Virus record (IMG/VR): IMGVR_UViG_3300042519_004024
Location: 1-64,000 of that record
Length of the DNA: 64,000 bases
Strand: one strand, 5' to 3'
Shown piece after piece: positions 4,984 to 55,549 of this stretch. The notes beneath the pieces were generated by a model that saw only the letters and a program-made list of their open reading frames with translations, ran no database searches and had not been told where the DNA came from. Numbering within the stretch: the first letter of the stretch is position 1; each line of letters opens with the position of its first letter. The translations under genes and the position numbers were made by a program.

Positions 4984-5316
4984 TTATACAGGGTTTACAT
5001 CTAATGTCCAAACAGCAGTATACGTATAATCTTTCATTGGAAAAAACATATCCATTATAAAATCAATCTCTCCTACTAATTCTGAAAAATCACTTGTTGT
5101 TACAATATCATCTTCATCAGAAATATAAATTGTAATTTTAATTTCTGGAGTTGGGATTAAATTTGAATTAAACCAAGTACCCATTTCAAAATCAACGTCT
5201 TTAAACCAATCTACATCAGAAAAGTATTCTATAATAAAGTTCTTTAATACTTTAATTACTTTACGAAACTCTGTCTCGGTTTCTTCTTTGAGTATACGTT
5301 TAATAAGATGTTTCAT
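4984..5316 (-). CDS. leader-bearing protein
   Basis: MKHLIKRILKEE; TATTTAT 6 nt upstream. Confidence 0.8.
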   Translation of the reverse strand: MKHLIKRILKEETETEFRKVIKVLKNFIIEYFSDVDWFKDVDFEMGTWFNSNLIPTPEIKITIYISDEDDIVTTSDFSELVGEIDFIMDMFFPMKDYTYTAVWTLDVNPV

Positions 5317-5375: not shown

Positions 5376-5792
5376 TCAATTGTTTTTTATATTTTTTTCC
5401 ATCCATATAAAGACCGTTTCAGTCAATGCGGAGGATAAATCACTAACATCAATATTTCTTCCATCAAGACTCAAAAAGGAATCAATATGTTCATTGTAAA
5501 TTGATGCATCCATGTTAATGTATTTTCCGTATTTTTGAATAAACTCATTTTGATAATCTGAAATCATTTTTGGTAAATTCATGTTTTTAATACAATTAGC
5601 AAACTCATTTTCAATATCCAAATTCAAGTCCCAATATAAATCATTAGCATACTCATCGGCCTCAACATAAGACTCAATAAATGATTCCTCATCTTCAAAT
5701 CCAAAACCTTCCCAATGGTTTTCATTTTCTTTAACCACCCGTTTAACAATACGTGTTAAATCTGATTCTGTAAGTTTTATAGTTCTTTTCAT
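5376..5792 (-). CDS. leader-bearing acidic protein
   Basis: start moved to MKRTIKLTESDLTRIVKRVVKE; TATTTAT at 5810-5816. Confidence 0.8.
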   Translation of the reverse strand: MKRTIKLTESDLTRIVKRVVKENENHWEGFGFEDEESFIESYVEADEYANDLYWDLNLDIENEFANCIKNMNLPKMISDYQNEFIQKYGKYINMDASIYNEHIDSFLSLDGRNIDVSDLSSALTETVFIWMEKNIKNN

Positions 5793-5913
5793 AATATAAT
5801 GTTTTATACATAAATACCCCGATTTTTCATAAAATTTTTCCAGAATTTTTTTTAATATCATAGGGACTTTTTTCTTATGAATACTTTGCAAAGGGGACTG
5901 TCCCCCCTTTTTA

Positions 5914-6043
5914 CCCCTGACAATGTGTCATATCGGAGGGGGGATACGGGGGAGGGGGCCCCAAATATATAGGGGGGTGGGGTATGCCAAAGTATAGAGG
6001 GGGGTATATAGTCCCCGTCATTTATTAACAGTCAATGTGTCAT
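5914..6043. repeat. G-rich island bracketed by an 11-bp direct repeat (CAATGTGTCAT)
   Basis: six runs of 4 or more G between 5938 and 6004; repeat copies at 5921-5931 and 6033-6043. Confidence 0.8.
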
Positions 6044-6099
6044 GTTAATAACTCTCTAAAAATATATGGGGGAATGTTTTGTAGTCTCATATATAATCC

Positions 6100-6246
6100 G
6101 TACCTTTATGATTGTCAGTGGTTCAGTCCGAGACGGGTCAGGGAAACAAGTTCTTCTCTAAGAGGGTGGACTCCAACCTGCCTTATAGTTTACAAAAGTT
6201 GGGACGTGTTGGAGTCTACTCGGTCCCCATCGTTAGTGACAGTTAC
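6100..6246 (-). ncRNA. candidate structured non-coding RNA, family unknown
   Basis: GC-enriched, with nested stems (9-bp GACUCCAAC/GUUGGAGUC; CCGAG/CUCGG; UGUCA/UGACA), downstream of a host-type promoter; boundaries approximate. Confidence 0.4.
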
Positions 6247-6250
6247 AGAG

Positions 6251-6282
6251 CTAAGGTACGAAAAAGATTTGACATATACAAA
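6251..6282 (-). promoter_or_regulatory. Bacteroidota-type promoter variant (TTTG-N20-TACCTTAG)
   Basis: same 20-nt spacing as six other sites; one mismatch in the -7 box. Confidence 0.55.
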
Positions 6283-6568
6283 CTTGACTGATAAGATATT
6301 TATCATTATTAATTATCATTGTATGAAAGAGGATGTTGTTACTTTATTTATGTGTATGTTATCCCTATTCATATCTTACTTAATAGTTTACATATCTAAC
6401 CATGATGACAATCGTTAATTATCTTCTTATCTCTCTTGGGATTATCTTCTCCCTCTTTTGGGTTGTGATGTTGTACTGTGTGTTCATAGTTGAATACATG
6501 AAAGGATCCAAACAATACTATTGGATTATAAAACATATCCTTACAGACGAGGACTTAGAACCTCTTGA

Positions 6569-6892: not shown

Positions 6893-6965
6893 ATTCCTTA
6901 ATGTTGTAACGGTTTACCATTAATTATATTAATGTTTTGTTGATAAATAAATACTAAATTGGTGT

Positions 6966-7616
6966 CTGACAGTATGTCAGGGGGAATGTTGATAACTTTT
7001 TTTTAAAAAAATATGTCATTTTATTTGTTTTTGTCAAAATGTCAGTCGAGCTTCACACAGGGGACAATCCTTTTTACCACTTTTCCCCACCATATTATTC
7101 CACTATTTACCACCATAATCCTTGCTGGTTATAGCTGTACCCTAAAAAATCCCCTCTGTAGGTATCTGTAGACGTATTTTTTTTACTATATACATTTTCC
7201 AGCTAATTAATGTATTAACTATGTAGTTAGCGCGGAGACGAAGTCCTTAAGTATTTCCAACGAATGGAACATGTAAATGTGACATATAATATACCCCAAC
7301 GTATAAAGGATCACTTAGATAAGATATTATAATAGTGGGAAAACGTGGGACAATTTAAAGGAATATGGTACATATAAAATAAACGTGTCCCTTTCTGTCC
7401 CACGTTATATGGTTCGTTTATATAATACTTTATTGTTCACCATACACTATTGTTCAGTTACACTGAACATCCCCTTTTAGTGAACACCTCATCAGTATAG
7501 TATAAGAAACATACATATACATCTTATATAGATTATCCATATAGATAATGGGGGACAGTTTATTAAACCCACTGAATGGGGGGAATTTGTTTACAATAGA
7601 TAGTTTACTGTAAACT
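6966..7616. promoter_or_regulatory. palindrome-rich non-coding control region
   Basis: CTGACAGTATGTCAG (6966-6980); 11-bp inverted repeat 7342-7352/7396-7406; nested inverted repeat 7434-7486; AGTTTACTGTAAACT (7602-7616); no ORF of 60 aa or more between 6923 and 7856. Confidence 0.5.
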
Positions 7617-7855
7617 TATTAATGTGTATTATATTTTAGTGTTGTATGATTATTATATTTTAATGCTAAATGTAAATACTTTTTACAATTGTAAGGTATT
7701 TTGTTAATAGTATATTACATTATGATTTAAGATATGTCCTAAGAATTACCACATAACCTTTATAGAAATGTAAGAGTATAGGATTAAGTTATGAAACGAA
7801 TGTCGTAGTGAATGAAATGAACGGTAGAGATGAGTGAGTAAATTAAATCTATACT

Positions 7856-8569
7856 CTACACATTAATGATAAACCACTCACCATTAAAATCTTCTACTAA
7901 ACAAGTGGAGTTCTCACAAAAGTCTCCTGAGTTCATATAATCTTTATCTAACTTAGGGTGATGAATATGTCCACATACCGCAACATCATATCCCTTCTGT
8001 ATTGTTAGTTGTTTTGCGTTTGTTTCAAAATCAGATACAAAGTTAATTGCTCCCTTTACTGATTGTTTAATTGTGTTTGCTAATGAATGATATGGTAGAT
8101 TAAACTTTCTTCTTATGTAGTTGTATATTGTATTTAATCTTATAACAAAATCATAACTCCATCCACCTATTACCGCTAACCATCTTACTTTCATTATAAC
8201 AAAGTCTAATACATCCCCGTGAAAACAAAAATACTTTCTTCCGTCTAATCCTTTGTGTACATACTTTCTTACAATCTCTATGTTATTCATCTTAAACGGG
8301 ACGAATGGTTTTAAAAAATCGTCGTGATTTCCTCTTATGTATATTACCTTTGTTCCCTGTTCACTTCTTTTCATAAACCTTCTAAATATCTTTGAACAAT
8401 CCTTACTCCATTTACCTTTTGATTTCATTGCCCAACCATCTATTATGTCACCATTTAGAATTAATATATCTGATTCATTCTTCTCTAAGAATTGTAGTAT
8501 CTTAGTTGTTTGTGATTGTCTTGCTCCTAAGTGTAAATCACTCATTATAATTGTTCTCCACTTTTTCAT
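7856..8569 (-). CDS. PlcP/LpxH-like (COG2908-type) metallophosphoesterase
   Basis: motifs SDLHLG, NGDIIDGW, RGNHDD, FHGD, CGHIH, NSGD; ATGA overlap with the upstream glycosyltransferase. Confidence 0.85.
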   Translation of the reverse strand: MKKWRTIIMSDLHLGARQSQTTKILQFLEKNESDILILNGDIIDGWAMKSKGKWSKDCSKIFRRFMKRSEQGTKVIYIRGNHDDFLKPFVPFKMNNIEIVRKYVHKGLDGRKYFCFHGDVLDFVIMKVRWLAVIGGWSYDFVIRLNTIYNYIRRKFNLPYHSLANTIKQSVKGAINFVSDFETNAKQLTIQKGYDVAVCGHIHHPKLDKDYMNSGDFCENSTCLVEDFNGEWFIINV

Positions 8570-9270
8570 TTCCAATATGTGTTATCGTCTGAAAAGAATT
8601 GTTTATTGTTTCTATTCAAAAATGATTTAATCATTAACCTCATCATATACATTACCCCCTTGTTATCAAATCTTCTTGGTGGCGTGAATACTGTGGTGTT
8701 TATTATTTTAAATCTATTTGGTTTAATTTGTTTTGATAGTAGGTAATCCTCTGCAACCTTCGCTTCTTCGTCAAATCCCCCTAATTCGTTAAATGTGTTC
8801 ATTTTAAATAACATAAACCCACCTAAACAAAATGGTGATATGAACTTGGATATCTTCTGTATAAAATCAAACGTTCTAAACACATAGTTATATTTCCCGT
8901 TTGTTGTTCTTATCTTCGTTGTAAGTAAATCAATTCCTCCATATAACATCATTCTTGTTACTGTATTTAAAAGTGTCGGATCAAGTAAATACATATCCGA
9001 ATCAATAAATAAAACGTATGGTGTTTTTACGTATCTTGCTCCGTTGTTTCTTGCCTTTGCTGGTAGTCCCCCTTCTATTATTTTTAAATCAAACTTATCG
9101 TTTGTTCTTGATTCCAATTGATATGTGGTTTCATCGGTGGATGAATCTGAAATAATAACTTTTACGTTATCTATGTTATCTTGGAAATTTAATAGGGATA
9201 GTGTGGAGTCTATTGTTTTTGATTCGTTTTTACACGGAATGACTATTGTTAAAAATTTAGATAGTTCCAT
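8566..9270 (-). CDS. glycosyltransferase family 2
   Basis: IVIPCKNE, DSSTDET, PAKARNNGA, FIDSD (DxD), AEDY. Confidence 0.9.
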   Translation of the reverse strand: MELSKFLTIVIPCKNESKTIDSTLSLLNFQDNIDNVKVIISDSSTDETTYQLESRTNDKFDLKIIEGGLPAKARNNGARYVKTPYVLFIDSDMYLLDPTLLNTVTRMMLYGGIDLLTTKIRTTNGKYNYVFRTFDFIQKISKFISPFCLGGFMLFKMNTFNELGGFDEEAKVAEDYLLSKQIKPNRFKIINTTVFTPPRRFDNKGVMYMMRLMIKSFLNRNNKQFFSDDNTYWK

Positions 9271-9347
9271 ATAATATAACTATCTTTGTAATTGGGTATT
9301 TGGTATTAACAAATCGTTAATAAATTATTTAGTCTTATACTCTTTTA

Positions 9348-9788
9348 TTACATCTCATTTTTGATATAATAATTAATAACCATATTAAATATATCCTTTA
9401 ACACACGACTTGTTAATATGTCATAATTTATATATGCCTCATCTGCCGATTCTTCATCATATCCATAATAATAAAATACAGCAACATCATGTGGGTATAA
9501 CATTTCTATTTGTGTTAATAGATCATCTTCATCCGTTAAAACTAATGGGTTTTCATTCATCTCTATAAAAGTTAGATACTCTTCTTCTGTAGTAAGTACG
9601 ATCTCTTTAATTAATTTAATCTTAATGTCATCTGTAAAATATTCTTTACCTAAAAGATAAATTAGTTCTTTTAACCCCCCGACTAATCTGGATGTATCTA
9701 ATATACCATTATCTTTAATTTGATTAATTAAAAATTGGTTTAGGTTTTCCTCCCTTAATACTTTTCTGATATGTTCTTGTAGGTTCAT
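9348..9788 (-). CDS. leader-bearing protein (MNLQE class) with 'LVGG' module
   Basis: MNLQEHIRKVLREE...GILDTSRLVGGLKEL. Confidence 0.8.
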   Translation of the reverse strand: MNLQEHIRKVLREENLNQFLINQIKDNGILDTSRLVGGLKELIYLLGKEYFTDDIKIKLIKEIVLTTEEEYLTFIEMNENPLVLTDEDDLLTQIEMLYPHDVAVFYYYGYDEESADEAYINYDILTSRVLKDIFNMVINYYIKNEM

Positions 9789-10451
9789 TTAAGTTAATTT
9801 TGTTATAATTTCATCAACAAGTTCTTCTGTTGTTTTTCTTTGTCCGTTTTCAGTGAAAGGATTTATATTTTGTTTACCCATATAAAATTCCCTTACACTG
9901 TTAATTGATTGTTGTATATCATCATCTTTGATTCCATCCTCTAAATTAGGTTGTCCCATCTTTTCCGCTCTGTCTTTTCTAGTTTGTTTTAGGAATTGGA
10001 TGTATGGTTTATCGTTTTCAGGTGAAAAAGGTAAACCAAAAACAAATAAGTTTGGTAGAGTATCTAATAGATCAGAATTTTTTATACTATCCCCACCAAT
10101 ATCCAAAACTACTTTGGTGTCACCATATTTTTGTAACAATTTAGTAAGAACACATCTCTTGTATTCATCATTTGTTGACCCATAATTATGTCCGTCTTCA
10201 GTTCTTGTAATATTAACTTCTACACCAGGTTCTCCCTTACATAATTCTTCATATTCTATACTACCTTCCATTTCATCAACATCTATATGAGGTATTCCCA
10301 ATTTTTCAGCAACCGCTTTAGCAGTTGTTGATTTACCAGCACCTGCCGTTCCAACAAATACAATAGGTTTGCTTTCGTAAACCCTTTGTTCTTCCTCAAT
10401 GATTAACCCCATCATTGATTTCATTCTTGATATGTGCTCTTGTAGGTTCAT
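9789..10451 (-). CDS. leader-fused P-loop kinase (shikimate/nucleotide kinase-like)
   Basis: MNLQEHISRMKSMM leader; Walker A GTAGAGKS followed by HIDVD. Confidence 0.75.
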   Translation of the reverse strand: MNLQEHISRMKSMMGLIIEEEQRVYESKPIVFVGTAGAGKSTTAKAVAEKLGIPHIDVDEMEGSIEYEELCKGEPGVEVNITRTEDGHNYGSTNDEYKRCVLTKLLQKYGDTKVVLDIGGDSIKNSDLLDTLPNLFVFGLPFSPENDKPYIQFLKQTRKDRAEKMGQPNLEDGIKDDDIQQSINSVREFYMGKQNINPFTENGQRKTTEELVDEIITKLT

Positions 10452-10454
10452 ACT

Positions 10455-11252
10455 CTATAAATCTTTAACGTACCCATCAATACCATTTTCGTTTATAAAC
10501 TCTTTAAAATAAATTTGTTTTGTACTACCTATTCCTTTAGTGACAAATTCACCTTCATCATACATCTCACCGAACTTATCATTAACCCATTTTAATACAA
10601 CATCTATAAGTCTTTTCTCATCATCTTTAAAATTATTTAAATTATACCATCTAAATAATAAACCTTCATTCTCATACGAGTCTTTTATATTTTGATCGGT
10701 AGTTGTATCAACATAATTTTTAATAAATTTACTAATTGGAAGTATGTGTCCCGCCGTAGAGAAAAATATATTTCTATCACTATTTAATAAGTTATATTCG
10801 GTGGCTAAAATACAAATATTCACACCTTGAGTTGTATAACCAACCATAGTATATTTATTTAACAAGGTTGCCTTTTCTTCATCCTCGTCATCCCCTCTCA
10901 TTCTTCTCATAGTCTTAAATAACTTAAGAAATTCAGGTGATCTTTCTATTTGTTTGGATCCTCGGACATAATATGAATTTTTAAAAAGCTCATTTAAATA
11001 GTTATATATTAATTTATTTAATAAACTTTCATAATCAATTTCTCCCGATTCTTCTTTTGCCACTTCAGGTTCATAATTAAAATCTTGTTCATTTCCTCCT
11101 GAATTTAAATGGGTGTTATATGCATCCATTTTATCTTTATCTTCTTTAGATAATTCTTCTCCTCGTCCAATCTTATCTAAGATATCGTCAATGTTTTCAT
11201 TAACTAATCCCATCATTGATTGTATTCTATTTATTTGTTCTTGTAAATTCAT
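10455..11252 (-). CDS. leader-bearing protein
   Basis: start moved to MNLQEQINRIQSMMGLVNE (ATGA overlap). Confidence 0.8.
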   Translation of the reverse strand: MNLQEQINRIQSMMGLVNENIDDILDKIGRGEELSKEDKDKMDAYNTHLNSGGNEQDFNYEPEVAKEESGEIDYESLLNKLIYNYLNELFKNSYYVRGSKQIERSPEFLKLFKTMRRMRGDDEDEEKATLLNKYTMVGYTTQGVNICILATEYNLLNSDRNIFFSTAGHILPISKFIKNYVDTTTDQNIKDSYENEGLLFRWYNLNNFKDDEKRLIDVVLKWVNDKFGEMYDEGEFVTKGIGSTKQIYFKEFINENGIDGYVKDL

Positions 11253-12022
11253 TTTGTTATATCTATATACCAAACTTTTATTGGTTCTATCCCCATCTGT
11301 AATGCTGTTGATGTTCTTTTGAATCCACCAATTAAAACATAATCATTACCTTCTTTTTGTGTGAAGTATTTTACAACAAATGCTGGTGGTAGTTTTCTTT
11401 CTTCACCCCTTCTTGCGTAATCTCTATAATCATCTATGTTTTTTGCCAATCTTCTTGGGTCTTCTTCATCTGAATCTTTTAGTCGTTGTGATACTCTTGA
11501 CGATACGCCTTTTTCTGGTGATTTATTCCATAAGAAATCTGTTATTTTTCCCATATAATCTGTGTTGTCCACATTGTCAACATATTCACCGGTTTCTGGA
11601 TCTATCCCTTTCCATACTTTCATTTCACCAAGACCAAAGAATTTATACCCTTCTTCTATACATTGTTGGTCATTCATCAATATATCTTTTAATTCATTCC
11701 ATCTTTTTTCTTCTTTTAAAAGAGATATCATATTTTGATTTAAAAGTATGTCCTTAATTTCACCTTCACTTTCTACTTCTTCACCTTTGGCAAATTCAGC
11801 AATTGTTTTAAATGTGTGTGGCATAATACGATAAACAGTATCGTAGTTGTCGGGATTAAAAAACTCTTGTTCTGTAAACCTACCAGGGTTTCCTAGTAAC
11901 TCACTTAATTCTTGTGTAAAATATTCCTTTGTTGGGTATTCCCATTCAACTTTGTATGGGTTTGATACTTCATTTAATCCCATCATTGACTGTATTCTTG
12001 ATATTTGTTCTTGTAAGTTCAT
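11249..12022 (-). CDS. leader-fused protein with C-terminal ParB/sulfiredoxin-like domain
   Basis: LPPAFVVK...YVLIGGFKRTSTALQMGIEPIKV resembles the ParB/Srx GxxR motif. Confidence 0.6.
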   Translation of the reverse strand: MNLQEQISRIQSMMGLNEVSNPYKVEWEYPTKEYFTQELSELLGNPGRFTEQEFFNPDNYDTVYRIMPHTFKTIAEFAKGEEVESEGEIKDILLNQNMISLLKEEKRWNELKDILMNDQQCIEEGYKFFGLGEMKVWKGIDPETGEYVDNVDNTDYMGKITDFLWNKSPEKGVSSRVSQRLKDSDEEDPRRLAKNIDDYRDYARRGEERKLPPAFVVKYFTQKEGNDYVLIGGFKRTSTALQMGIEPIKVWYIDITK

Positions 12023-12023
12023 A

Positions 12024-12797
12024 TTATTTAGACTCAGGTAATTTCATATCCTTTATAAATTTATCGTGAGACTTTTTATAAGATTTCTGTGACTCATCAT
12101 TTGAATCTTTAGTGTATTGCCAATTCCAATAAAGTTTGTTGTTAGGTTTGAACCCATAATACTCATGACTTTCTTTTTGTGTTTCAGTAACATTCTCACC
12201 ATTCCAATTTTGTCCAACACAAATAAATCCTGATTCAATATCTTTAATTAAATTAGACTCACCTAAGGTTGAGTGTCTATTTTGAATCCATGTAAGTCTT
12301 TCCATTAAGTTTTGGTAATACATATTTGCTTGTCCCCATCTTACAGATGAAAAGAATACCACCGCATCTGATTCAAATAATTCTTTACTAACCTTCCATA
12401 GTTCATCTGATGGTTCATTAATATTTACCCAACATCTATGATGTCCTGTGGGGTTCTTTTTCTTGTCTTTAAGAGCCGCTTTTAATAATCCACAAGAGTT
12501 TCCATCAGCTCTTGATACATTACCCTCACATGGTAATATTTTAAGTTCTGTGATATCCATATAAGTTGCCTTGTTACCCAATTCTTCTTTAATGTGTAAT
12601 GCCAACAATCTTGATTTAGGAATGTCCATATTATTCTCATCCCAATTATATCTATTGGAACAACTTAGTAATAAAACTTTCTTTTTATTTTTAAGTATTT
12701 TAATTGTTTCTTCTAATACTTTCCATCCGTCAGATTGTACCATCTCTTCGGATAACATTATTGATTTCATTCTTGATATTTGTTCTTGTAGATTCAT
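12024..12797 (-). CDS. leader-fused flavodoxin-fold NAD(P)H:FMN reductase / iron-sulfur flavoprotein-like protein
   Basis: KVLLLSCSNR, ILPCEG..C..C, DAVVFFSSVRWG, LMERL. Confidence 0.8.
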   Translation of the reverse strand: MNLQEQISRMKSIMLSEEMVQSDGWKVLEETIKILKNKKKVLLLSCSNRYNWDENNMDIPKSRLLALHIKEELGNKATYMDITELKILPCEGNVSRADGNSCGLLKAALKDKKKNPTGHHRCWVNINEPSDELWKVSKELFESDAVVFFSSVRWGQANMYYQNLMERLTWIQNRHSTLGESNLIKDIESGFICVGQNWNGENVTETQKESHEYYGFKPNNKLYWNWQYTKDSNDESQKSYKKSHDKFIKDMKLPESK

Positions 12798-13288
12798 TAT
12801 TTTTTCTTTTTAACACAATTAGGGTATTGTTTACCAAACATTGTTTTCATTCCTTTTTGAGTATATCCTTTCCAACACTTTTCTGTTAACTCACCTTCTT
12901 TCATTTCAATTTCAGAAGAATCTGTATCAAAAATTATATCACCTATTACATCTAATGTTTTTTTGTTTGTGGCGTTTTTAATTACCTTCGGGGCTTTTCC
13001 TTCATCGTATGCTTCTTTCCATCTTTTTGCACATAAACACCATCTATCTCCGCTTTTTAACATAGATAAATCATTTCCTTTTGATTTTGTAAACTCAAGG
13101 AATTCATCATCCACTTCACTACAAACCGTGTGTGTACCTCCATCTGTACTATCTGTCTTGCAATAACCATCCCTGAAATAACCTGTAATTGGATTTTTCC
13201 CGCATATTTGTAATGGTTTATCTAATATATTCATATCAGATATATCCATCATTGATTTCATTCTTGATAATTGTTCTTGTAGGTTCAT
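12797..13288 (-). CDS. leader-fused DUF2237-family protein with C-terminal Cys mini-module
   Basis: PITGYFRDGYC, HTVC, GND, GDRWCLCAKRW; tail CWKGY...PNCV; TATTTAT 4 nt upstream. Confidence 0.8.
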   Translation of the reverse strand: MNLQEQLSRMKSMMDISDMNILDKPLQICGKNPITGYFRDGYCKTDSTDGGTHTVCSEVDDEFLEFTKSKGNDLSMLKSGDRWCLCAKRWKEAYDEGKAPKVIKNATNKKTLDVIGDIIFDTDSSEIEMKEGELTEKCWKGYTQKGMKTMFGKQYPNCVKKKK

Positions 13289-13310
13289 AGTAATAAATAC
13301 TATAAAAATA

Positions 13311-13337
13311 AAAAACCCCACCTATAATGGATGGGGA
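13311..13337 (-). terminator. intrinsic terminator
   Basis: CCCCA/TGGGG stem plus T-run after the nitroreductase. Confidence 0.65.
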
Positions 13338-13343
13338 CTTTTA

Positions 13344-13973
13344 TTATTTTTTAATGAAGAACTTTTCGTTATCCCACCTTACTTTCTTTAGTGACGCAAG
13401 ATAATCATTTTCACCATCTCTATATCCTAATGGTAGAAGTGCTACTGACATTAAACCTAATTCTTGTAATCCTAAGATTCTATCTACCGCAGCAGGATTG
13501 AATCCTTCCATTGGTGTTGAATCCACTTCCTCTGTTGCTGCCGCCACTAAAGCAAATCCTAAACCAATATATGCTTGTCTTTGTGCCCATGTAACTTTTT
13601 GTTCATGTTCCATATTAGATAGTGAACCCTTAACCATATCACCTAATCCATTTAACGATTCTACAGGGATTTCTCTTTGTCTTGCAATCTCATTCATATA
13701 AATGTCTACCGCATCGTCTGATACGTCGTCCCATGTAGCAAACACAAGTACTGCCGATGAGTCTGCTAATTGTGATTGTCCGTAAGCGGCTCCTTGTAGT
13801 TCTTCTTTTAATTTCTGATCCTCTACAACAATAACATTGTATGGTGTAAGTCCGTATGAGCTCGGTGCAAGTCTTGTGACTTCTAAGATTCTTTCTAATT
13901 TATCCTGTGGGATTTTCTCCCCATTCATTTTCTTGGTGGCATATCTCCACTCTAATGATTTTAATAGTTCCAT
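13344..13973 (-). CDS. nitroreductase family NAD(P)H-dependent oxidoreductase
   Basis: WRYATKK, LAPSSYGL.P, AAYGQ.Q, STPMEGF; no leader. Confidence 0.9.
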   Translation of the reverse strand: MELLKSLEWRYATKKMNGEKIPQDKLERILEVTRLAPSSYGLTPYNVIVVEDQKLKEELQGAAYGQSQLADSSAVLVFATWDDVSDDAVDIYMNEIARQREIPVESLNGLGDMVKGSLSNMEHEQKVTWAQRQAYIGLGFALVAAATEEVDSTPMEGFNPAAVDRILGLQELGLMSVALLPLGYRDGENDYLASLKKVRWDNEKFFIKK

Positions 13974-14075
13974 AATTATTTTTGTTTTACTCTCAATTAT
14001 AGAACTTTTAAATTTTATTGTAAACAAAAAATAGGGTTATTTACCCCCATCGATATTTGTTTTTGTATATTCATA

Positions 14076-14534
14076 TTATATAATTATTAAATCCCAAGCT
14101 TTACACCCATACTTATCGTTTATTAAATTTAAAAGACTTTCTTTCCAATTCATTTGTGGACCAAAGTAGTTTTCAATATCTTCGGCAAAGTCCTGATAAA
14201 ATACAATTACATTAAAACGTGGATCTTTAACATCAGGGAAATCATAACAAGGTTCAGGTAATTCATCTCTTAATTCTTTAGGGTAATCCCCATCATCATC
14301 GTATTTAGTATCATCAACCAATTTAAATATATAATCTTCATAATGATGTGTCGGTAAAACAAACCCGATAGCATATGGATCACAACATACCCCCATACCA
14401 CAGTTATAGTTTGCCCAATCGTAGTACATATCATCAAACCCATCAAACAACATATTAAGTAGGTTGTGTAGTACGGGTTTAATGTTTGTTTCTTCCCTTA
14501 ATACTTTTTTTATGTGTTCTTTTTTACTTCTCAT
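14076..14534 (-). CDS. protein with degenerate leader
   Basis: MRSKKEHIKKVLREE; start overlaps the 3' end of 14524..14826. Confidence 0.7.
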   Translation of the reverse strand: MRSKKEHIKKVLREETNIKPVLHNLLNMLFDGFDDMYYDWANYNCGMGVCCDPYAIGFVLPTHHYEDYIFKLVDDTKYDDDGDYPKELRDELPEPCYDFPDVKDPRFNVIVFYQDFAEDIENYFGPQMNWKESLLNLINDKYGCKAWDLIII

Positions 14535-14826
14535 CACAATTTGTGTTTGTTATAATAGCAAATAAGGATACAGGTATATATGCTTTTAAAGAAACTTCCA
14601 ATTTTTCATTTAAATAATTACCTGAATCCCCATTATATAGTACAAGTATTATATATGTATTTTCCACATACACAGCAACTACATCACATACATTTTCCTC
14701 ACCAAGATAACTTATTGTGAGTTCCTCCAAAAGATCAGAAAATTTACCTTTATTTACAGTTTCTTTTTTAAACTTCTTTATGGTTTCTTCCCTTAATACT
14801 TTTATTATGTGTTCTTGTAGGTTCAT
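14524..14826 (-). CDS. leader-bearing single-module protein (VCD..YIP..C module)
   Basis: MNLQEHIIKVLREE; body resembles the repeats in 17367..19274. Confidence 0.8.
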   Translation of the reverse strand: MNLQEHIIKVLREETIKKFKKETVNKGKFSDLLEELTISYLGEENVCDVVAVYVENTYIILVLYNGDSGNYLNEKLEVSLKAYIPVSLFAIITNTNCDEK

Positions 14827-15422
14827 TGCTGTAATTGGTTTTTAACCGTATTATAAAAATATTCACTAACTTTTTTTGGTGAGTCAATATTTTTTCCTTT
14901 CATGTCTCTTTTATAATGACTAATCATCATTGATATTTGTTGTAATGAAATATTTTTGTACATTTGTGGTGGTGTAAATGAACCAATTAGTCCCATCTTT
15001 TGAAGTTGTCTGATTTTCCTTGCCGCGAATTCATCTGCAACTTCCTCTGTATTTTTCATAAACTCAGCGGCATGTCTTTCTGAAACATCACCCAAATAAC
15101 AACGATACATAAGTTCTTCACCATACTTTTTAAATTGATATTGGTGCGCAACTTCGTGAAGTATAACAAACAACAAAAATGGTAATGGTCTATTAAGTAC
15201 TGTTGAATTAATTAAAACCCCAGTTTCTAATGCGATACCTAATGCTGGTACACTAAAACTTGAGAAGTTTATTCTTTTACAGTTTGATTCTTCAATAAAC
15301 TTTTTTACGAATTCTTTTAGTTCATCTGACATATCATGTGTATTTGATAATTCATCTAAGAATACATCAATACCTTCTGTCTCTTCCTTTAATATTCTTC
15401 TTATATGTTCTTGTAAATTCAT
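14823..15422 (-). CDS. leader-fused HExxH zinc metallopeptidase (ImmA/IrrE-like)
   Basis: FVILHEVAHQY and EEVADEFA. Confidence 0.7.
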   Translation of the reverse strand: MNLQEHIRRILKEETEGIDVFLDELSNTHDMSDELKEFVKKFIEESNCKRINFSSFSVPALGIALETGVLINSTVLNRPLPFLLFVILHEVAHQYQFKKYGEELMYRCYLGDVSERHAAEFMKNTEEVADEFAARKIRQLQKMGLIGSFTPPQMYKNISLQQISMMISHYKRDMKGKNIDSPKKVSEYFYNTVKNQLQQ

Positions 15423-15423
15423 A

Positions 15424-15792
15424 TTAATATGTAACGTGTTCTGCTTCTGTATCAAACTCACTATTAAACCAATCTATAACATACGTTGCTGCGTCTTCAC
15501 CTAAATAATTTTCAAGCGTTTTATATATTTCTGGATTCATATGTAGTTCTCTTTTTGTAGGGGTATACGACGCATATATATGATCGGTTTTATTATCAAA
15601 ACATTCATATAAAAAACTATCCCAAAACAATGGTCGTCTTTCTTTTAAGTGTGCACCATCTTTATTAAAGTTTGGATAAAGTGCCTTTAATATTGAATCA
15701 ACGGCACTAATGTTTTTAATTATTTGGTTACTGTAGTCTTCCTGTGGAAACTCCTCGATTAATACTTTTCTTATATGTTCTTGTAGATTCAT
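15424..15792 (-). CDS. leader-bearing protein
   Basis: MNLQEHIRKVLIEE; TATTTAT 7 nt upstream. Confidence 0.8.
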   Translation of the reverse strand: MNLQEHIRKVLIEEFPQEDYSNQIIKNISAVDSILKALYPNFNKDGAHLKERRPLFWDSFLYECFDNKTDHIYASYTPTKRELHMNPEIYKTLENYLGEDAATYVIDWFNSEFDTEAEHVTY

Positions 15793-40065: not shown

Positions 40066-41091
40066 TTATTTTCCAAATCCTACTTTACCACCACCCTTAA
40101 TTGTTGGTGCCTTTTTTAATCCCTCCAAGTTATCGATAGTCTCCTCAAAACTTCTACCCATAACAATAACCGAAATTACAACTTCTTTCAAATGTGACAA
40201 TGACATTCCCTCAGTTTTTTTAATCCACTCTTCAATGTTGATGTTTTTTAAATCATCCTCATTTAATTTATGTTCAATGTATGCTCTTCTGATATCATCG
40301 TTGGGTAACTCAACTTTATATCGTCTGTCAAAACGAGAAGGTCTATTTGTTATTCGTTCTTGTAATTTTTCAGGGTAGTTGGTTGTTGCTATATAAACAA
40401 CCCCCTCAATTTGTTTAACACCATCAAGAATGTTTAATAGTCTTGCCGTCTGATATCTATTTTCGCCAGCAAGTGAATCAATATCCTCCAATAGAACAAC
40501 TAACGGTCTGTTTGGTTCAACCTTTCTGAATGTTGCAATGAATGATGTAAATCTATCAACGTCTTCCTCATCTTTAACATTTATAACAATACCGTCTTTC
40601 TCAATTAACTGCTGAGAAATTAATTGTATAATTCCTGATTTTCCACATCCTGGTTCACCATACATCAGGATTCCTCGTTTGTGTATGTAATTGTATTTTT
40701 TATAATTTTCAGCCCTATTCCAAAAGTTATCAATATCTTTTAAAATGTCGGTAATCTCATAAGATGGTAGATGATACAACTCGTCTGTCTTGAATGGTTG
40801 TTTTTTCAAAGTATGTGTTTGTAAATTTCCATTCCAACCAATTTCATAAACACCGGCAGGGACTTTAGGTACTGTAACGTAAGCCGGAGCATATTCATCA
40901 TTTTTTAAGTTACTCCAACAAGAAGGAACATCAACATCTTTTTTTTCTTCGTTGTTTGGAATATTTATTTTTTTACGGATGATTGGTTCTTCTTCCTCAG
41001 AATAACCTGTATATTCAATAGCCTCATCAATATATTCTTCGCTCATGTTATTTCTTTTTAAAATTTTTTTTAATTCTTCTTTCCATTCCAT
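40066..41091 (-). CDS. AAA+ ATPase
   Basis: GEPGCGKS, LLEDID, LNILDG, TTNYPE, RPSRFD. Confidence 0.9.
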   Translation of the reverse strand: MEWKEELKKILKRNNMSEEYIDEAIEYTGYSEEEEPIIRKKINIPNNEEKKDVDVPSCWSNLKNDEYAPAYVTVPKVPAGVYEIGWNGNLQTHTLKKQPFKTDELYHLPSYEITDILKDIDNFWNRAENYKKYNYIHKRGILMYGEPGCGKSGIIQLISQQLIEKDGIVINVKDEEDVDRFTSFIATFRKVEPNRPLVVLLEDIDSLAGENRYQTARLLNILDGVKQIEGVVYIATTNYPEKLQERITNRPSRFDRRYKVELPNDDIRRAYIEHKLNEDDLKNINIEEWIKKTEGMSLSHLKEVVISVIVMGRSFEETIDNLEGLKKAPTIKGGGKVGFGK

Positions 41092-41719: not shown

Positions 41720-41750
41720 TAAAAAAAGGTGACTCTATCAATGAGAGTCA
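41720..41750 (-). terminator. intrinsic terminator
   Basis: GGTGACTCT/AGAGTCACC plus T-run. Confidence 0.7.
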
Positions 41751-42871
41751 CCAACATTATTTTTTTCTCCGTATATTAAGTAGTCAGGGTTTATTACTTT
41801 AGATACTTTTCTACGATCACCAGTTACAGATTTCACAACTATACCTTCATGTGGTACTTTACCCCCTTCTATGTTGTTATTAAACACAAAAGTATCTTGT
41901 ATCTCTTTAACCCATATACCTTTGTATAGTAACTCAACTTGTGGTAATTGTAGACAATCAAAGTGTACTGTTTCATTTATGTATGGTTGGTACACTCCAT
42001 CAACTTCAACATCAAATCCTGCGAATTTAACATCGGTCAAACCGTACTCATAGTTTTTTTGTATACCAGCCCCGTATATCTCGCCGTATATAACAACACC
42101 TTCATTTAAGTCAGTTGGTTCGTAAGTATCTTTTACGTGATCCCACAACTTACCTCTTATGTCGTAAGTGTTCGCCACAGTTTTCCATACATCAGTATCG
42201 TAAAACCCTTGTGAATCAGAACCCTTCTCAACGTTATGAGAACCATAAACATATTCAAATGCTGCCCATTGATTTCCAAAGAACATTTTAACACGATCCC
42301 ATATAGATAGTTTTTTCTTTCTAACTATACCGTAACGAGCATTAGTTCCATGAAGTTTACGAGTTATAACAACTTCATCTTCCTCACTGAACATATCAGG
42401 TACGTTCTTTTGGTTAGGGAACTTGTAGTAAACTTTGAAGTTAGGGTTTTGGTGGTATTTTATTTTACGTCCACCAACACTTAACTGAACGGTTTTAACT
42501 GGTGGTTCGTATTTAGTTATACCAAGTATTCCCATCATATCATCACCTTCATTAACGTTGTTCTCCAATGATTTTGGTGCCAAGTATTTGAATGGTATTA
42601 ATAAACATTCAGAGTAAACACCTCGAAGTTTAACGGTACGAACTCTTTGTCCTTTACGAAGGTAGTTAGTTACTTCCATCAAGTCAGATAAAGCTTGTGG
42701 TATTACCGCATCAGTAGTTGCAACAACAACCTTATCGTCTACTTTGTATTCGCCTTTCTTGGTTATGGCGTTCCACCCACCAACAGTAACTAACTCTATG
42801 TTATCGGCGTTTGGTATTTCAGATATAGAACCTATCTTACCAACATATGCAACACTATTTAAATTTTCCAT
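41738..42871 (-). CDS. RNA ligase, DRB0094/Rnl2-type with N-terminal OB-like domain
   Basis: IPNADNIE; motif I KLHGTN; IYGEIYG; FDV; EGIVVK; KVINPDY. Confidence 0.9.
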   Translation of the reverse strand: MENLNSVAYVGKIGSISEIPNADNIELVTVGGWNAITKKGEYKVDDKVVVATTDAVIPQALSDLMEVTNYLRKGQRVRTVKLRGVYSECLLIPFKYLAPKSLENNVNEGDDMMGILGITKYEPPVKTVQLSVGGRKIKYHQNPNFKVYYKFPNQKNVPDMFSEEDEVVITRKLHGTNARYGIVRKKKLSIWDRVKMFFGNQWAAFEYVYGSHNVEKGSDSQGFYDTDVWKTVANTYDIRGKLWDHVKDTYEPTDLNEGVVIYGEIYGAGIQKNYEYGLTDVKFAGFDVEVDGVYQPYINETVHFDCLQLPQVELLYKGIWVKEIQDTFVFNNNIEGGKVPHEGIVVKSVTGDRRKVSKVINPDYLIYGEKNNVGDSH

Positions 42872-54221: not shown

Positions 54222-54470
54222 TTAATTATTTAATAGATAAACAACTGTAGCCCCTAATGCATATCCAATCGCTGACGCCATTGCCATTTTTATTCTTTCT
54301 GTCCATGTTTTTGATTCAACCATATATCCAACAAAAGGTAACCCTAAGAACGGACCCATTGATGCCCAAAATATCATATAGACACTCCTTTCAGCAACGG
54401 TAGCAATATACATTGTTGATGCCGTTTCTAAAATGAATGCTGCTAGACCTATGATAAAGTATTTTTTCAT
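54222..54470 (-). CDS. small membrane protein
   Basis: three hydrophobic segments. Confidence 0.7.
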   Translation of the reverse strand: MKKYFIIGLAAFILETASTMYIATVAERSVYMIFWASMGPFLGLPFVGYMVESKTWTERIKMAMASAIGYALGATVVYLLNN

Positions 54471-55549
54471 TAATTTGATAATGGTGCTTTAATTGATGGG
54501 TGTGATTGATAATTTTCAACAACAAAATCAGTATTTTCTAAATGATTAAATAAAGATATGTCTTCAGATAGTGATTTAAAAAACTCGTCTGTTTTCATAA
54601 ACTTTAAAGTAGGTAATTGATAAGGTTCTCTTGTAATTTGTTGTCCAGCTTGTGTTAAATGGTTTTCATACAAATGAACATCACCCAAGTTACCAATTAA
54701 TTCATCAGGAACCATATTAACTTCTTTTGCAATGATTTCTAATAACAAGCCGTAAGATGCAATGTTGAATGGTAAACCTAAGAATGTATCTACTGAACGT
54801 TGATTCCACATTAAAGAGATTGCTCGTTTGGGGATGTTTGCCTGATTTACATCTAATTCTGCCAAACTACATTCATACCAACCTGCATTATTTGTTTGGA
54901 TTTTTTCTACACCGTATATTTCAACTCTTTCCTCCAAACTCAACTCTCTTGTATAAACTTGAAATCCATAATGACAAGGTGGAAGGACCATTTGGTCTAA
55001 TTCACCAACATTCCAAGCTGAAACCATTAATCGTCTTGAGTCTGGGTTTGTTTTAAGGTCATTGATTAGGTTTGCGATTTGGTCTATGACCTTTTCCCCA
55101 ACTAATGTATGTAGACCGTTGTGTCCTATTGTTACATTTTCACCAGTTCCCCACTTTCTCCACTGTTTACCATAAATAGGACCTAACTCACCCCACTTCT
55201 TAGCAAACTCATCATCTGTTTTAATTAATTCAATGAATCTTTCCATTGAAGTTTCTTCATCCGTGTAGTAAGTAAACCTTTTATACACGTCACCATTCCA
55301 AATATGACAATTGTTATCAACCAGGAACTTAATGTTTGTATCACCACGTAGAAACCATACTAATTCTGTTGTGATTGTTTTGAATGGCATTTTTTTAGTG
55401 GTAAGCAAAGGAAACCCATCTGACATCTTGTGTCGGATCTGTCTACCAAATACTGATCTGGTTCCCGTTCCTGTTCTATCATTTTTTTTAATACCATTTT
55501 GAATTATATCAAATAATAATTCTTGGTAATTTCTATCTAGTTGGTTCAT
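54470..55549 (-). CDS. thyA: thymidylate synthase
   Basis: DRTGTGT, FPLLTTKK, GPIYGKQWR, LPPCH, QRSVD..GLPFN, GDVHLY. Confidence 0.97.
   Translation of the reverse strand: MNQLDRNYQELLFDIIQNGIKKNDRTGTGTRSVFGRQIRHKMSDGFPLLTTKKMPFKTITTELVWFLRGDTNIKFLVDNNCHIWNGDVYKRFTYYTDEETSMERFIELIKTDDEFAKKWGELGPIYGKQWRKWGTGENVTIGHNGLHTLVGEKVIDQIANLINDLKTNPDSRRLMVSAWNVGELDQMVLPPCHYGFQVYTRELSLEERVEIYGVEKIQTNNAGWYECSLAELDVNQANIPKRAISLMWNQRSVDTFLGLPFNIASYGLLLEIIAKEVNMVPDELIGNLGDVHLYENHLTQAGQQITREPYQLPTLKFMKTDEFFKSLSEDISLFNHLENTDFVVENYQSHPSIKAPLSN

What the first reader, a model, noticed from the sequence alone, without database searches (positions are those of the whole stretch)
7856..9270. PlcP-like phosphoesterase coupled to a GT2 glycosyltransferase: possible phage-encoded membrane-lipid remodelling
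Seen: a translationally coupled pair (ATGA overlap). The phosphoesterase has GNHD rather than the GNRD of LpxH, plus the W..SYD..LN and SLA..K..VK.A.NF.SDFE segments I associate with COG2908/PlcP. Established: PlcP with a neighbouring glycosyltransferase replaces phospholipids with glycolipids under phosphate starvation in marine heterotrophs. Inference: the phage frees phosphate from host lipids for DNA synthesis or alters the cell envelope.
Basis: partly seen in the sequence, partly recalled or inferred. Interest (0 to 1): 0.6.

Follow-up and report, generated by a model that had tools for sequence, protein, structure and literature searches.

The report
Lake phage PlcP-like lipid-remodelling gene pair
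A large freshwater phage carries a translationally coupled pair, a small GT2 sugar-transferase and a PlcP-type (not LpxH-type) lipid phosphoesterase, which most likely turns host phospholipids into phosphorus-free glycolipids; the pair is common in environmental phages, where the esterase is annotated as "lpxH".

Summary
GT2 (8566-9270, minus strand) and a 237-aa metallophosphoesterase (7856-8569, minus strand) share an ATGA stop/start overlap. The record is a tailed jumbo phage found in lake-water metagenomes.

The esterase is not LpxH:
- It scores 40.7 bits against a 134-bit LpxH cut-off.
- In trees it sits with the second, non-LpxH paralogue of bacterial genomes, split from true LpxH by a 100%-supported long branch.
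- That paralogue has the plcP-agt signature: a glycosyltransferase lies directly downstream in 52 of 80 bacterial loci, and at least five relatives are GT4-esterase fusions.

Of the 80 best viral loci, 49 carry this GT2 next to the esterase, in either order, and 21 carry a GT4 instead. GT2 and GT4 swap beside closely related esterases, so the GT2 probably does Agt's job of glycosylating diacylglycerol.

Phospholipase C activity, the GT2 acceptor and the benefit to the phage (phosphate supply or envelope change) are inferred, not shown. I found no paper describing a phage PlcP; viral surveys list such genes as lpxH. I rate it a new variant of a known pathway, of moderate to good interest.

The parts
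8566..9270 (-). GT2-family (GT-A fold) glycosyltransferase, 234 aa. Carries a DxD motif (D90, D92), an ED pair (E174, D175), an RR pair (R199, R200) and a basic/aromatic C-terminal helical tail. Proposed diacylglycerol glycosyltransferase.
   Evidence: Pfam PF00535 58.6 bits; PF13506 (GT21) 34.9 bits against a 21.7 cut-off. 27 of 31 family members also hit PF13506. Invariant residues from alignment A3. AlphaFold model pLDDT 93.3; generic GT-A matches in the PDB. Adjacent to the esterase in 49 of 80 viral loci.
7856..8569 (-). PlcP-type metallophosphoesterase, 237 aa. Has an LpxH-like fold with a two-helix cap at residues ~119-191 and all metal-ligand motifs (SDxH, GD, GNHD, HGD, GHIH). Proposed Mn-dependent phospholipase C that releases diacylglycerol.
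   Evidence: Pfam Metallophos. LpxH models far below cut-off. Invariant D11, H13, D41, N81, H82, H117, H201, H203. Trees. AlphaFold model pLDDT 89.2; the top 25 PDB matches are all LpxH.
8566..8569 (-). ATGA overlap: the esterase start ATG (8569-8567) overlaps the GT2 stop TGA (8568-8566). This is translational coupling.
   Evidence: Read directly from the sequence. The same 4-nt overlap occurs in 27 of 35 related viral loci with GT2 upstream.
9271..9347 (-). 77-nt AT-rich spacer between the preceding gene (9348-9788) and the GT2 start. No Pho box. The only promoter-like consensus match nearby lies inside the upstream gene (9416-9388).
   Evidence: These are consensus scans only and do not show function.

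Best explanation
The pair is a phage-borne version of the bacterial PlcP-glycosyltransferase lipid-renovation pathway.

Proposed steps:
1. The esterase is cytoplasmic and has no signal peptide. It docks on the inner membrane through its helical cap and, with a two-metal centre, cuts the phospho-head group off phosphatidylethanolamine or phosphatidylglycerol, leaving diacylglycerol.
2. The co-translated GT2 transfers a sugar from a nucleotide sugar onto that diacylglycerol. The membrane keeps a bilayer-forming, phosphorus-free glycolipid in place of the phospholipid.
3. The net effect during infection in phosphorus-poor lakes is to move lipid phosphorus into the soluble pool, where it can feed synthesis of a >200-kb genome, while the cell stays intact until lysis.

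Shown: gene anatomy and coupling, PlcP-clade membership, LpxH-type fold, conserved pairing with a GT in phages, and GT2/GT4 interchange.

Inferred: substrate, product, sugar, timing and benefit.
For: 1. Not LpxH. NF003743 scores 40.7 bits against a 134 cut-off and TIGR01854 32.3 against 190. In ten bacterial genomes (nine with two paralogues, one with only the low-scoring one) the LpxH-type paralogue scores 62-336 bits and the other 38-57 bits, which is the window protein's range.
2. Trees. LpxH is split from everything else by a 100%-supported branch of length 2.6. The window protein lies in a viral clade (support 93) that joins Bacteroidota and Verrucomicrobiota non-LpxH paralogues with 100% support (the same picture).
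3. The non-LpxH clade contains homologues from Pseudomonas, Rhizobium, Agrobacterium and Methylocystis, which are the same or sister genera to organisms where PlcP was characterised (PMC8528852, PMC4796936, PMC9239053). In 33 of 80 bacterial loci a GT4 lies directly downstream, in 18 a Glyco_trans_1_3 GT and in 1 a GT2. This is the published plcP-agt operon signature.
4. Rosetta-stone fusions. Five representatives at 36-43% identity are GT4-esterase fusion proteins.
5. Phage loci. 49 of 80 have this GT2 adjacent (35 upstream, 14 downstream) and 21 have a GT4 downstream. GT2- and GT4-partnered esterases are sister tips, e.g. L163/L166 with 99% support.
6. Fold. The top 25 PDB matches are all LpxH, a lipid-binding metallophosphoesterase with a cap inserted at the same place.
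7. The GT2 passes the Pfam GT21 cut-off. GT21 is one of the three families known as glycoglycerolipid synthases (PMC8231724).
8. Phosphate link. The Pelagibacter phage Mosig homologue lies next to a PstS gene. The closest annotated-record homologue sits beside ppk1 and ppx. The phage occurs in lake water from about 17 studies and carries PhoH.
Against: - No enzyme of this viral or Bacteroidota subclade has been assayed.
- I could not place the characterised PlcP sequences themselves in the tree, only homologues from the same or sister genera.
- The partner is a GT2, not the characterised GT4. Its closest PDB folds are teichoic-acid and polysaccharide transferases, which says nothing about a lipid acceptor.
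- No Pho box lies near the pair and there is no RNA evidence.
- A complete related phage (196,980 bp, terminal repeats) has the esterase but no such GT2, so the GT is dispensable.
- The host is unknown.
- PstS was not found in the 214 kb held.
Confidence: 0.6

Rival explanations
1. Envelope change rather than phosphate supply. The same two reactions occur, but the selected benefit is an altered membrane or surface: exclusion of other phages, altered receptor display, or membrane stabilisation before lysis.
For: The chemistry is the same as in the best explanation, so all the family evidence applies. The GT partner is kept in 70 of 80 phage loci, which a pure phosphate-mining role does not require. 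Lipid renovation is known to change membrane proteins and is discussed in relation to phage receptors (PMC9804370). No Pho box or PstS is present in this phage.
Against: Glycolipids made at the inner membrane are not obviously exposed. Esterase-only phages exist. The Mosig homologue sits beside PstS. The habitat is typically phosphorus-poor (my own knowledge).
Confidence: 0.2
2. LPS pathway interference. The esterase acts like LpxH on UDP-2,3-diacylglucosamine and the GT2 modifies LPS or another envelope glycan, as the automatic 'lpxH' and 'cell wall glycosyltransferase' labels imply.
For: Source annotations call the relatives LpxH. The phage records name the homologues UDP-2,3-diacylglucosamine hydrolase. 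The fold is LpxH-like. A weak PHROG hit links the GT2 to GtrB-like O-antigen conversion. The nearest PDB folds of the GT2 are wall-polymer transferases.
Against: Scores are far below both LpxH equivalog cut-offs. The protein is separated from true LpxH of the same bacterial genomes by a 100%-supported long branch. Its clade is defined by lipid-GT neighbours and fusions. The GT2 is 234 aa and the model shows no transmembrane segment, unlike GtrB.
Confidence: 0.1
3. An unrelated phosphodiesterase role, for example a nuclease or a degrader of nucleotide signals, with the GT2 modifying DNA or a protein.
For: The best PHROG hit is labelled 'DNA repair exonuclease' (44 bits). Mre11/SbcD folds appear lower in the structure search. 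Phages often glycosylate DNA (my own knowledge).
Against: The LpxH-type cap insertion and the clade membership argue for a lipid substrate. The partner alternates with Agt-like GT4 enzymes. The phage has a separate SbcC-like protein elsewhere.
Confidence: 0.05

Closest known systems
PlcP phospholipase C with the Agt glycosyltransferase (Sinorhizobium meliloti SMc00171, Phaeobacter MED193_17359, Pelagibacter HTCC7211, Pseudomonas aeruginosa PA3219/PA3218)
   Same: Same metallophosphoesterase clade: 35-45% identity to bacterial homologues, including those from Pseudomonas, Rhizobium and Methylocystis genomes. Same two-gene logic of an esterase plus a glycosyltransferase, often overlapping. Related to LpxH but separate from it.
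   Different: It is carried by a phage. The protein is shorter (237 aa against about 265-300). The partner is a GT-A-fold GT2, not the GT-B-fold GT4, and it sits upstream instead of downstream. No Pho box is present. Activity is untested.
LpxH (UDP-2,3-diacylglucosamine diphosphatase)
   Same: Same fold with a helical cap inserted in the metallophosphoesterase core; the best structural matches have TM 0.52-0.59. Same metal-ligand motifs.
   Different: 15-21% identity in structural alignments. Fails both NCBIfam equivalog cut-offs. Forms a separate clade. Reads GNHD where proteobacterial LpxH reads GNRD.
Pgt processive diacylglycerol glycosyltransferases (GT21) and other lipid-acceptor GT2-clan enzymes
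   Same: The phage GT2 passes the Pfam GT21 gathering score. pgt lies next to plcP in some bacteria (PMC4796936).
   Different: The GT21 hit is secondary; the best hit is generic GT2. The phage protein is small. No sequence-level orthology to Pgt was tested.
Phage phosphate-stress auxiliary genes (pstS, phoH, phoA of cyanophages and pelagiphages)
   Same: Same ecological logic. The Mosig homologue is adjacent to pstS, and this phage has phoH.
   Different: The target would be membrane lipid phosphorus, not external phosphate uptake.

Membership tests
PlcP (metallophosphoesterase phospholipase C of lipid renovation) | Calcineurin-like metallophosphoesterase with intact metal-binding motifs | tested here: met
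   Pfam PF00149 58.7 bits. D11, H13, D41, N81, H82, H117, H201 and H203 are invariant across 46 family members.
PlcP (metallophosphoesterase phospholipase C of lipid renovation) | Groups with the non-LpxH paralogue and apart from LpxH | tested here: met
   Trees: the LpxH split has 100% support and the window protein sits inside a 100%-supported clade with Bacteroidota and Verrucomicrobiota paralogues.
PlcP (metallophosphoesterase phospholipase C of lipid renovation) | Operon with a glycolipid glycosyltransferase | tested here: met
   ATGA-coupled to a GT. 70 of 80 viral loci and 52 of 80 bacterial loci have an adjacent GT. Here the GT is a GT2, not the characterised GT4.
PlcP (metallophosphoesterase phospholipase C of lipid renovation) | Direct sequence comparison with the experimentally characterised proteins | not tested
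Only homologues from Pseudomonas, Rhizobium, Agrobacterium and Methylocystis genomes were used.
PlcP (metallophosphoesterase phospholipase C of lipid renovation) | Pho-box / PhoB-controlled expression | tested here: not met
   The proteobacterial Pho-box pattern gave 7 matches against 6.97 expected by chance, and none lies near the pair. This is not expected of a phage with an unknown host, so it is weak evidence.
PlcP (metallophosphoesterase phospholipase C of lipid renovation) | Mn-dependent release of diacylglycerol from phospholipids | not testable with these tools
   Needs an enzyme assay or lipidomics.
LpxH | Reaches the curated equivalog score | tested here: not met
   NF003743 40.7 bits against 134; TIGR01854 32.3 against 190.
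LpxH | GNRD in motif III | tested here: not met
   The window protein reads GNHD. All four proteobacterial LpxH read GNRD, but three Bacteroidota LpxH-type proteins also read GNHD, so the feature is not universal.
LpxH | Metallophosphoesterase core with an inserted helical lipid-binding cap | tested here: met
   The model has helices 119-126, 129-155 and 163-191 inserted in the core. The top 25 PDB hits are LpxH. The cap has lower confidence (pLDDT 56-78 in parts).
Agt (GT4 diacylglycerol glucosyl/glucuronosyl transferase) | GT-B fold with Glyco_transf_4 plus Glycos_transf_1 domains | tested here: not met
   The window GT is a GT-A-fold GT2.
GT21 / Pgt-type lipid glycosyltransferases | Match to the Pfam Glyco_transf_21 model above its gathering score | tested here: met
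   34.9 bits against 21.7. 27 of 31 family members match at E <= 0.001. This is a secondary hit within the GT2 clan, so it is suggestive only.
GtrB-like polyprenyl-phosphate glycosyltransferases | C-terminal transmembrane helices after the GT-A domain | tested here: not met
   The protein is 234 aa and the model ends in short amphipathic helices at 199-227. PHROG 841 scores only 20.6 bits.

The most novel reading that the evidence does not exclude
Large numbers of environmental phages (at least 568 IMG/VR loci) run their own phospholipid-to-glycolipid conversion, using a largely virus-specific GT2 that has repeatedly swapped with Agt-type GT4 enzymes. If so, the 'lpxH' auxiliary genes listed in aquatic viromes are really lipid-phosphorus mining genes, and viral infection is an unrecognised driver of membrane lipid remodelling and phosphorus flow in phosphorus-limited lakes and oceans. 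The GT2 may also make a glycolipid that no host enzyme makes.
Probability: 0.4. Interest if true: 0.75.

Novelty: new variant of a known kind. Interest (0 to 1): 0.6.

Why it matters
Membrane phospholipids are one of the larger phosphorus stores of a small bacterial cell. A phage with a genome above 200 kb needs a lot of phosphorus. A phage-encoded PlcP pathway would be a new class of phosphate-stress auxiliary gene that acts on the host's own membrane, not on uptake.

It would also correct a routine mis-annotation. Viral 'lpxH' is currently counted under LPS biosynthesis (PMC10653327).

It gives a testable candidate for a new diacylglycerol glycosyltransferase family with a GT-A fold.

It links viral infection to the glycolipid signatures used as markers of phosphorus stress in natural waters.

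Tried and rejected
- **Pho box.** The proteobacterial pattern gave chance-level matches and none near the pair.
- **Expression.** No run recorded as RNA holds the stretch. The two 'RNA?' runs are probably DNA and hold only diverged relatives, so there is no expression evidence.
It was not run and no claim of binding is made.
- **Rfam** over the whole window found nothing.
- **Capsid searches.** T4 Gp23 and NCLDV capsid Pfam searches of the record found nothing, and the controls did not ring either, so they are uninformative.
- **PstS** was not found in the 214 kb held.
- **PDB by sequence** gave only one weak LpxH match, E = 0.0066.
- **PHROG label** 'DNA repair exonuclease' was rejected as a superfamily-level hit.
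- **Bacteroidota GT2 search.** In 301 genomes the best matches were distant (about 100 profile bits; pairwise E 1e-8 to 1e-12) and none lay next to a PlcP-like gene.
- **First tree.** It contained one mis-extracted LpxH row (L094, wrong strand) and one very divergent row (L106), each with a branch length near 10. I rebuilt it.
- **Rows left out of the second tree:** L106; 45 viral rows more than about 80% similar to a kept row; 39 of the 80 bacterial loci, dropped for size.
- **Papers not held.** Wei et al. 2018 (PlcP Mn dependence and residues) and Devers et al. 2011 were not available.
- **Other conditions.** No alternative genetic code was used. Read laying was given 3,501 letters.
- **Costly protein search.** I used the large representative search because the family scans left the protein open between LpxH and PlcP.

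Full report
**1. What is in the sequence**

Two minus-strand ORFs fill 7856-9270. The upstream one is a 234-aa GT2 glycosyltransferase, from ATG 9270 to a TGA stop at 8568-8566. The downstream one is a 237-aa metallophosphoesterase, from ATG 8569 to a stop ending at 7856. The sequence at the junction is ATGA, so the esterase start overlaps the GT2 stop by four bases. ORF-calling also lists a TTG two codons upstream, but homologues start at the ATG.

Pfam gives Metallophos 58.7 bits and Glycos_transf_2 58.6 bits. There is a secondary Glyco_transf_21 hit of 34.9 bits, above its 21.7 cut-off.

**2. What the genome is**

The window is the first 64 kb of a 213,924-bp IMG/VR virus record, about 71% complete. 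It has about 30% G+C and nearly all genes are on one strand.

Phage hallmark and common phage genes:
- a T4 gp6-like baseplate wedge protein, a tail protein and an SbcC-like protein;
- a T4-type RNA ligase and a thymidylate synthase;
- PhoH.

It is therefore a large tailed phage. Near-identical DNA is held by lake-water metagenomes from about 17 studies, and two of them carry 100%-identical pieces. The host is unknown.

**3. PlcP or LpxH?**

*Model scores.* The two LpxH equivalog models score 40.7 and 32.3 bits against cut-offs of 134 and 190. By sequence, the PDB gives only one weak LpxH match.

*Family size and fusions.* An exhaustive search of cluster representatives found 4,465 relatives at E <= 0.001. 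Five of the closest, at 36-43% identity, are fusion proteins with an N-terminal GT4 (Agt-type) glycosyltransferase and a C-terminal esterase.

*Bacterial neighbourhoods.* A scan of one genome per species returned 80 bacterial loci at 35-45% identity. They include Pseudomonas, Rhizobium, Agrobacterium, Methylocystis, Bradyrhizobium, many Bacteroidota, Verrucomicrobiota and Campylobacterota. In 69 loci a same-strand ORF follows the esterase directly:

| Downstream gene | Loci |
|---|---|
| GT4 | 33 |
| Glyco_trans_1_3 (Bacteroidota type) | 18 |
| GT2 | 1 |
| Patatin-like phospholipase | 2 |

. This is the plcP-agt arrangement described for marine bacteria, Pseudomonas aeruginosa and Methylosinus (PMC4796936, PMC8528852, PMC9239053).

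*Paralogues in the same genomes.* I searched ten of these genomes with the LpxH model. Nine hold two paralogues:
- one scores 243-336 bits in gamma/beta-proteobacteria, 95-105 bits in Bacteroidota and 62 bits in Arcobacter;
- the other scores 38-57 bits, which is the window protein's range.

The tenth genome has only the low-scoring paralogue.

*Tree.* In the cleaned tree, LpxH is separated from all else by a 100%-supported branch of length 2.6. The window protein sits in a clade of 16 viral sequences (support 93). That clade joins the Bacteroidota and Verrucomicrobiota non-LpxH paralogues with 100% support. The first tree gave the same topology.

*GNHD.* All 79 non-LpxH sequences in the tree read GNHD or GNHE. 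The four proteobacterial LpxH read GNRD, but the three Bacteroidota LpxH-type proteins also read GNHD.

*Structure.* The AlphaFold model has pLDDT 89.2, and its top 25 PDB matches are all LpxH structures. The protein shares LpxH's core plus a helical cap inserted at the same position, which fits a membrane-lipid substrate. No PlcP structure exists for comparison.

**4. The GT2**

Its relatives are mostly viral, in both the language-model atlas and the word search. In 301 Bacteroidota genomes the best matches are distant, and none is next to a PlcP-like gene. One alphaproteobacterial MAG has a moderately similar GT2 right after its PlcP-like gene.

The family keeps a DxD motif, an ED pair, an RR pair and a basic/aromatic C-terminal helical tail. 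The model (pLDDT 93.3) matches generic GT-A enzymes such as TarS, TarP, WrtF and an archaeal mannosyltransferase, which does not identify the acceptor.

27 of 31 members also match the GT21 model. GT21 is one of the three families known to make glycoglycerolipids and includes the Pgt enzymes (PMC8231724).

**5. The pair in other phages**

Among the 80 best:

| Arrangement | Loci |
|---|---|
| This GT2 upstream of the esterase | 35 |
| This GT2 downstream of the esterase | 14 |
| GT4 downstream of the esterase | 21 |
| Neither | 10 |

. The 4-nt overlap recurs in 27 of the 35 GT2-upstream loci.

In a second viral clade, GT2-partnered and GT4-partnered esterases are sister tips. In one comparison (L150 against L166) the upstream gene and the esterase are shared at the DNA level, while the downstream partner differs. 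Adjacency kept through changes of order, together with exchange against a characterised type of diacylglycerol glycosyltransferase, is my main reason to assign the GT2 the same job.

The GT is not obligatory. A complete 196,980-bp relative with terminal repeats has the esterase but no such GT2.

Among cultured phages, Pelagibacter phage Mosig has a homologue at 37% identity next to a PstS gene, and Synechococcus phage S-SRM01 has one at 30%. Both are annotated as UDP-2,3-diacylglucosamine hydrolase or diphosphatase. The best hit in the phage collection, MT836169, is really a Bacteroidales-like chromosomal fragment. It carries TyrRS, TatD, the esterase coupled to a Glyco_trans_1_3 GT, then ppk1 and ppx.

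**6. Mechanism and rivals**

Most likely the esterase removes the phospho-head group from host phospholipids, and the GT2 caps the resulting diacylglycerol with a sugar. I put phosphate supply ahead of envelope alteration as the benefit, for these reasons:
- the habitat is lake water;
- the Mosig homologue is adjacent to PstS;
- a bacterial relative sits beside ppk1 and ppx;
- esterase-only phages exist.

The near-universal retention of a GT keeps the envelope reading alive. An LpxH-like role in LPS synthesis is contradicted by scores, trees and neighbourhoods. A nuclease or signalling role is unlikely given the cap and the clade. Nothing here shows enzyme activity, expression or the identity of the sugar.

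**7. Novelty**

Full-text searches for PlcP together with phage, virus or auxiliary-gene terms found no description of a phage PlcP. One virome study lists 'lpxH' among surface-water LPS auxiliary genes (PMC10653327), which is probably this family.

The pathway itself is known in bacteria. What is new is its carriage by phages, its frequency there, and the GT2 partner.

Noticed in passing
window 9348-15792, minus strand: Nine consecutive or near-consecutive genes start with the same N-terminal peptide, in two flavours: MNLQEQISRMKSMMGL... and MNLQEHIRKVLREE.... Their bodies are unrelated (P-loop kinase-like, DUF2237, unknowns). The DNA upstream of each is not conserved. No other ORF in the 214-kb record has this leader. 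Summed contig depth peaks over two of the leaders (9691-9807, 10393-10500), and contig joints connect one leader to other genes in relatives. It may be a capsid-targeting or cleavable leader as in T4 internal proteins (it contains an LxE), or a recombination module.
   Followed up: partly
window 4984-5316 and 5376-5891, minus strand: Two further small proteins carry related N-terminal helices (MKHLIKRILKEETE...; ...KRTIKLTESDLTRIVKRVVKENE...). They resemble the second flavour of the MNLQE leader.
   Followed up: no
window 6893-7855 and 5892-6568: Two stretches of about 960 and 680 nt have no convincing ORF on either strand, directly downstream of the esterase, in an otherwise tightly packed genome. 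There is no Rfam family, no tRNA and no strong repeats or terminators.
   Followed up: partly
window 7845/9370 (joint seen in runs X19 and X20): Contigs of related phages join 7845 to 9370 with 34 other letters between. This would remove exactly the GT2-esterase pair (1,524 nt) and suggests the pair behaves as a cassette. The evidence is weak: only 26 letters lie on the shorter side, at 85% likeness.
   Followed up: no
P0250, P0265, P0269, P0287, P0375; loci L016, L044, L077: Natural GT4-esterase fusion proteins of about 560-660 aa occur among the closest representatives. ORFs of 609-648 aa that span the esterase match in Verrucomicrobiota and a Pseudomonas MAG look like the same fusion, but their N-terminal parts were not scanned.
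   Followed up: partly
L004 (MT836169.1, 'Bacteriophage sp.', unverified): This 12-kb record in the phage collection looks like a bacterial (Bacteroidales-like) chromosomal fragment. It carries TatD, tyrosyl-tRNA synthetase, a PlcP-like esterase overlapping a Glyco_trans_1_3 GT, polyphosphate kinase 1 and exopolyphosphatase.
   Followed up: yes
L014, L046 (Campylobacterota loci): In Campylobacterales and Arcobacter the PlcP-like gene is followed by a patatin-like phospholipase, not a glycosyltransferase. This is a different lipid-degrading pairing.
   Followed up: no
G000:C1:128485-129687 (L008:4485-5687, minus strand) and G000:C1:209539-210150: The same phage has a second, unrelated glycosyltransferase (Pfam GlcNAc PF11397, PHROG 24687) inside the tail/baseplate region, and a PhoH gene near the far end of the record.
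   Followed up: no
window 54470-55549, 41738-42871, 40066-41091, minus strand: A thymidylate synthase 359 aa long, which matches its PHROG profile (335 positions) end to end with about 80 extra residues; a T4 RnlA-type RNA ligase; and an AAA ATPase.
   Followed up: no
L139 (IMGVR_UViG_3300032291_002550, 196,980 bp, direct terminal repeats): A complete related phage genome has the PlcP-like gene (53% identity) but no homologue of the GT2.
   Followed up: partly
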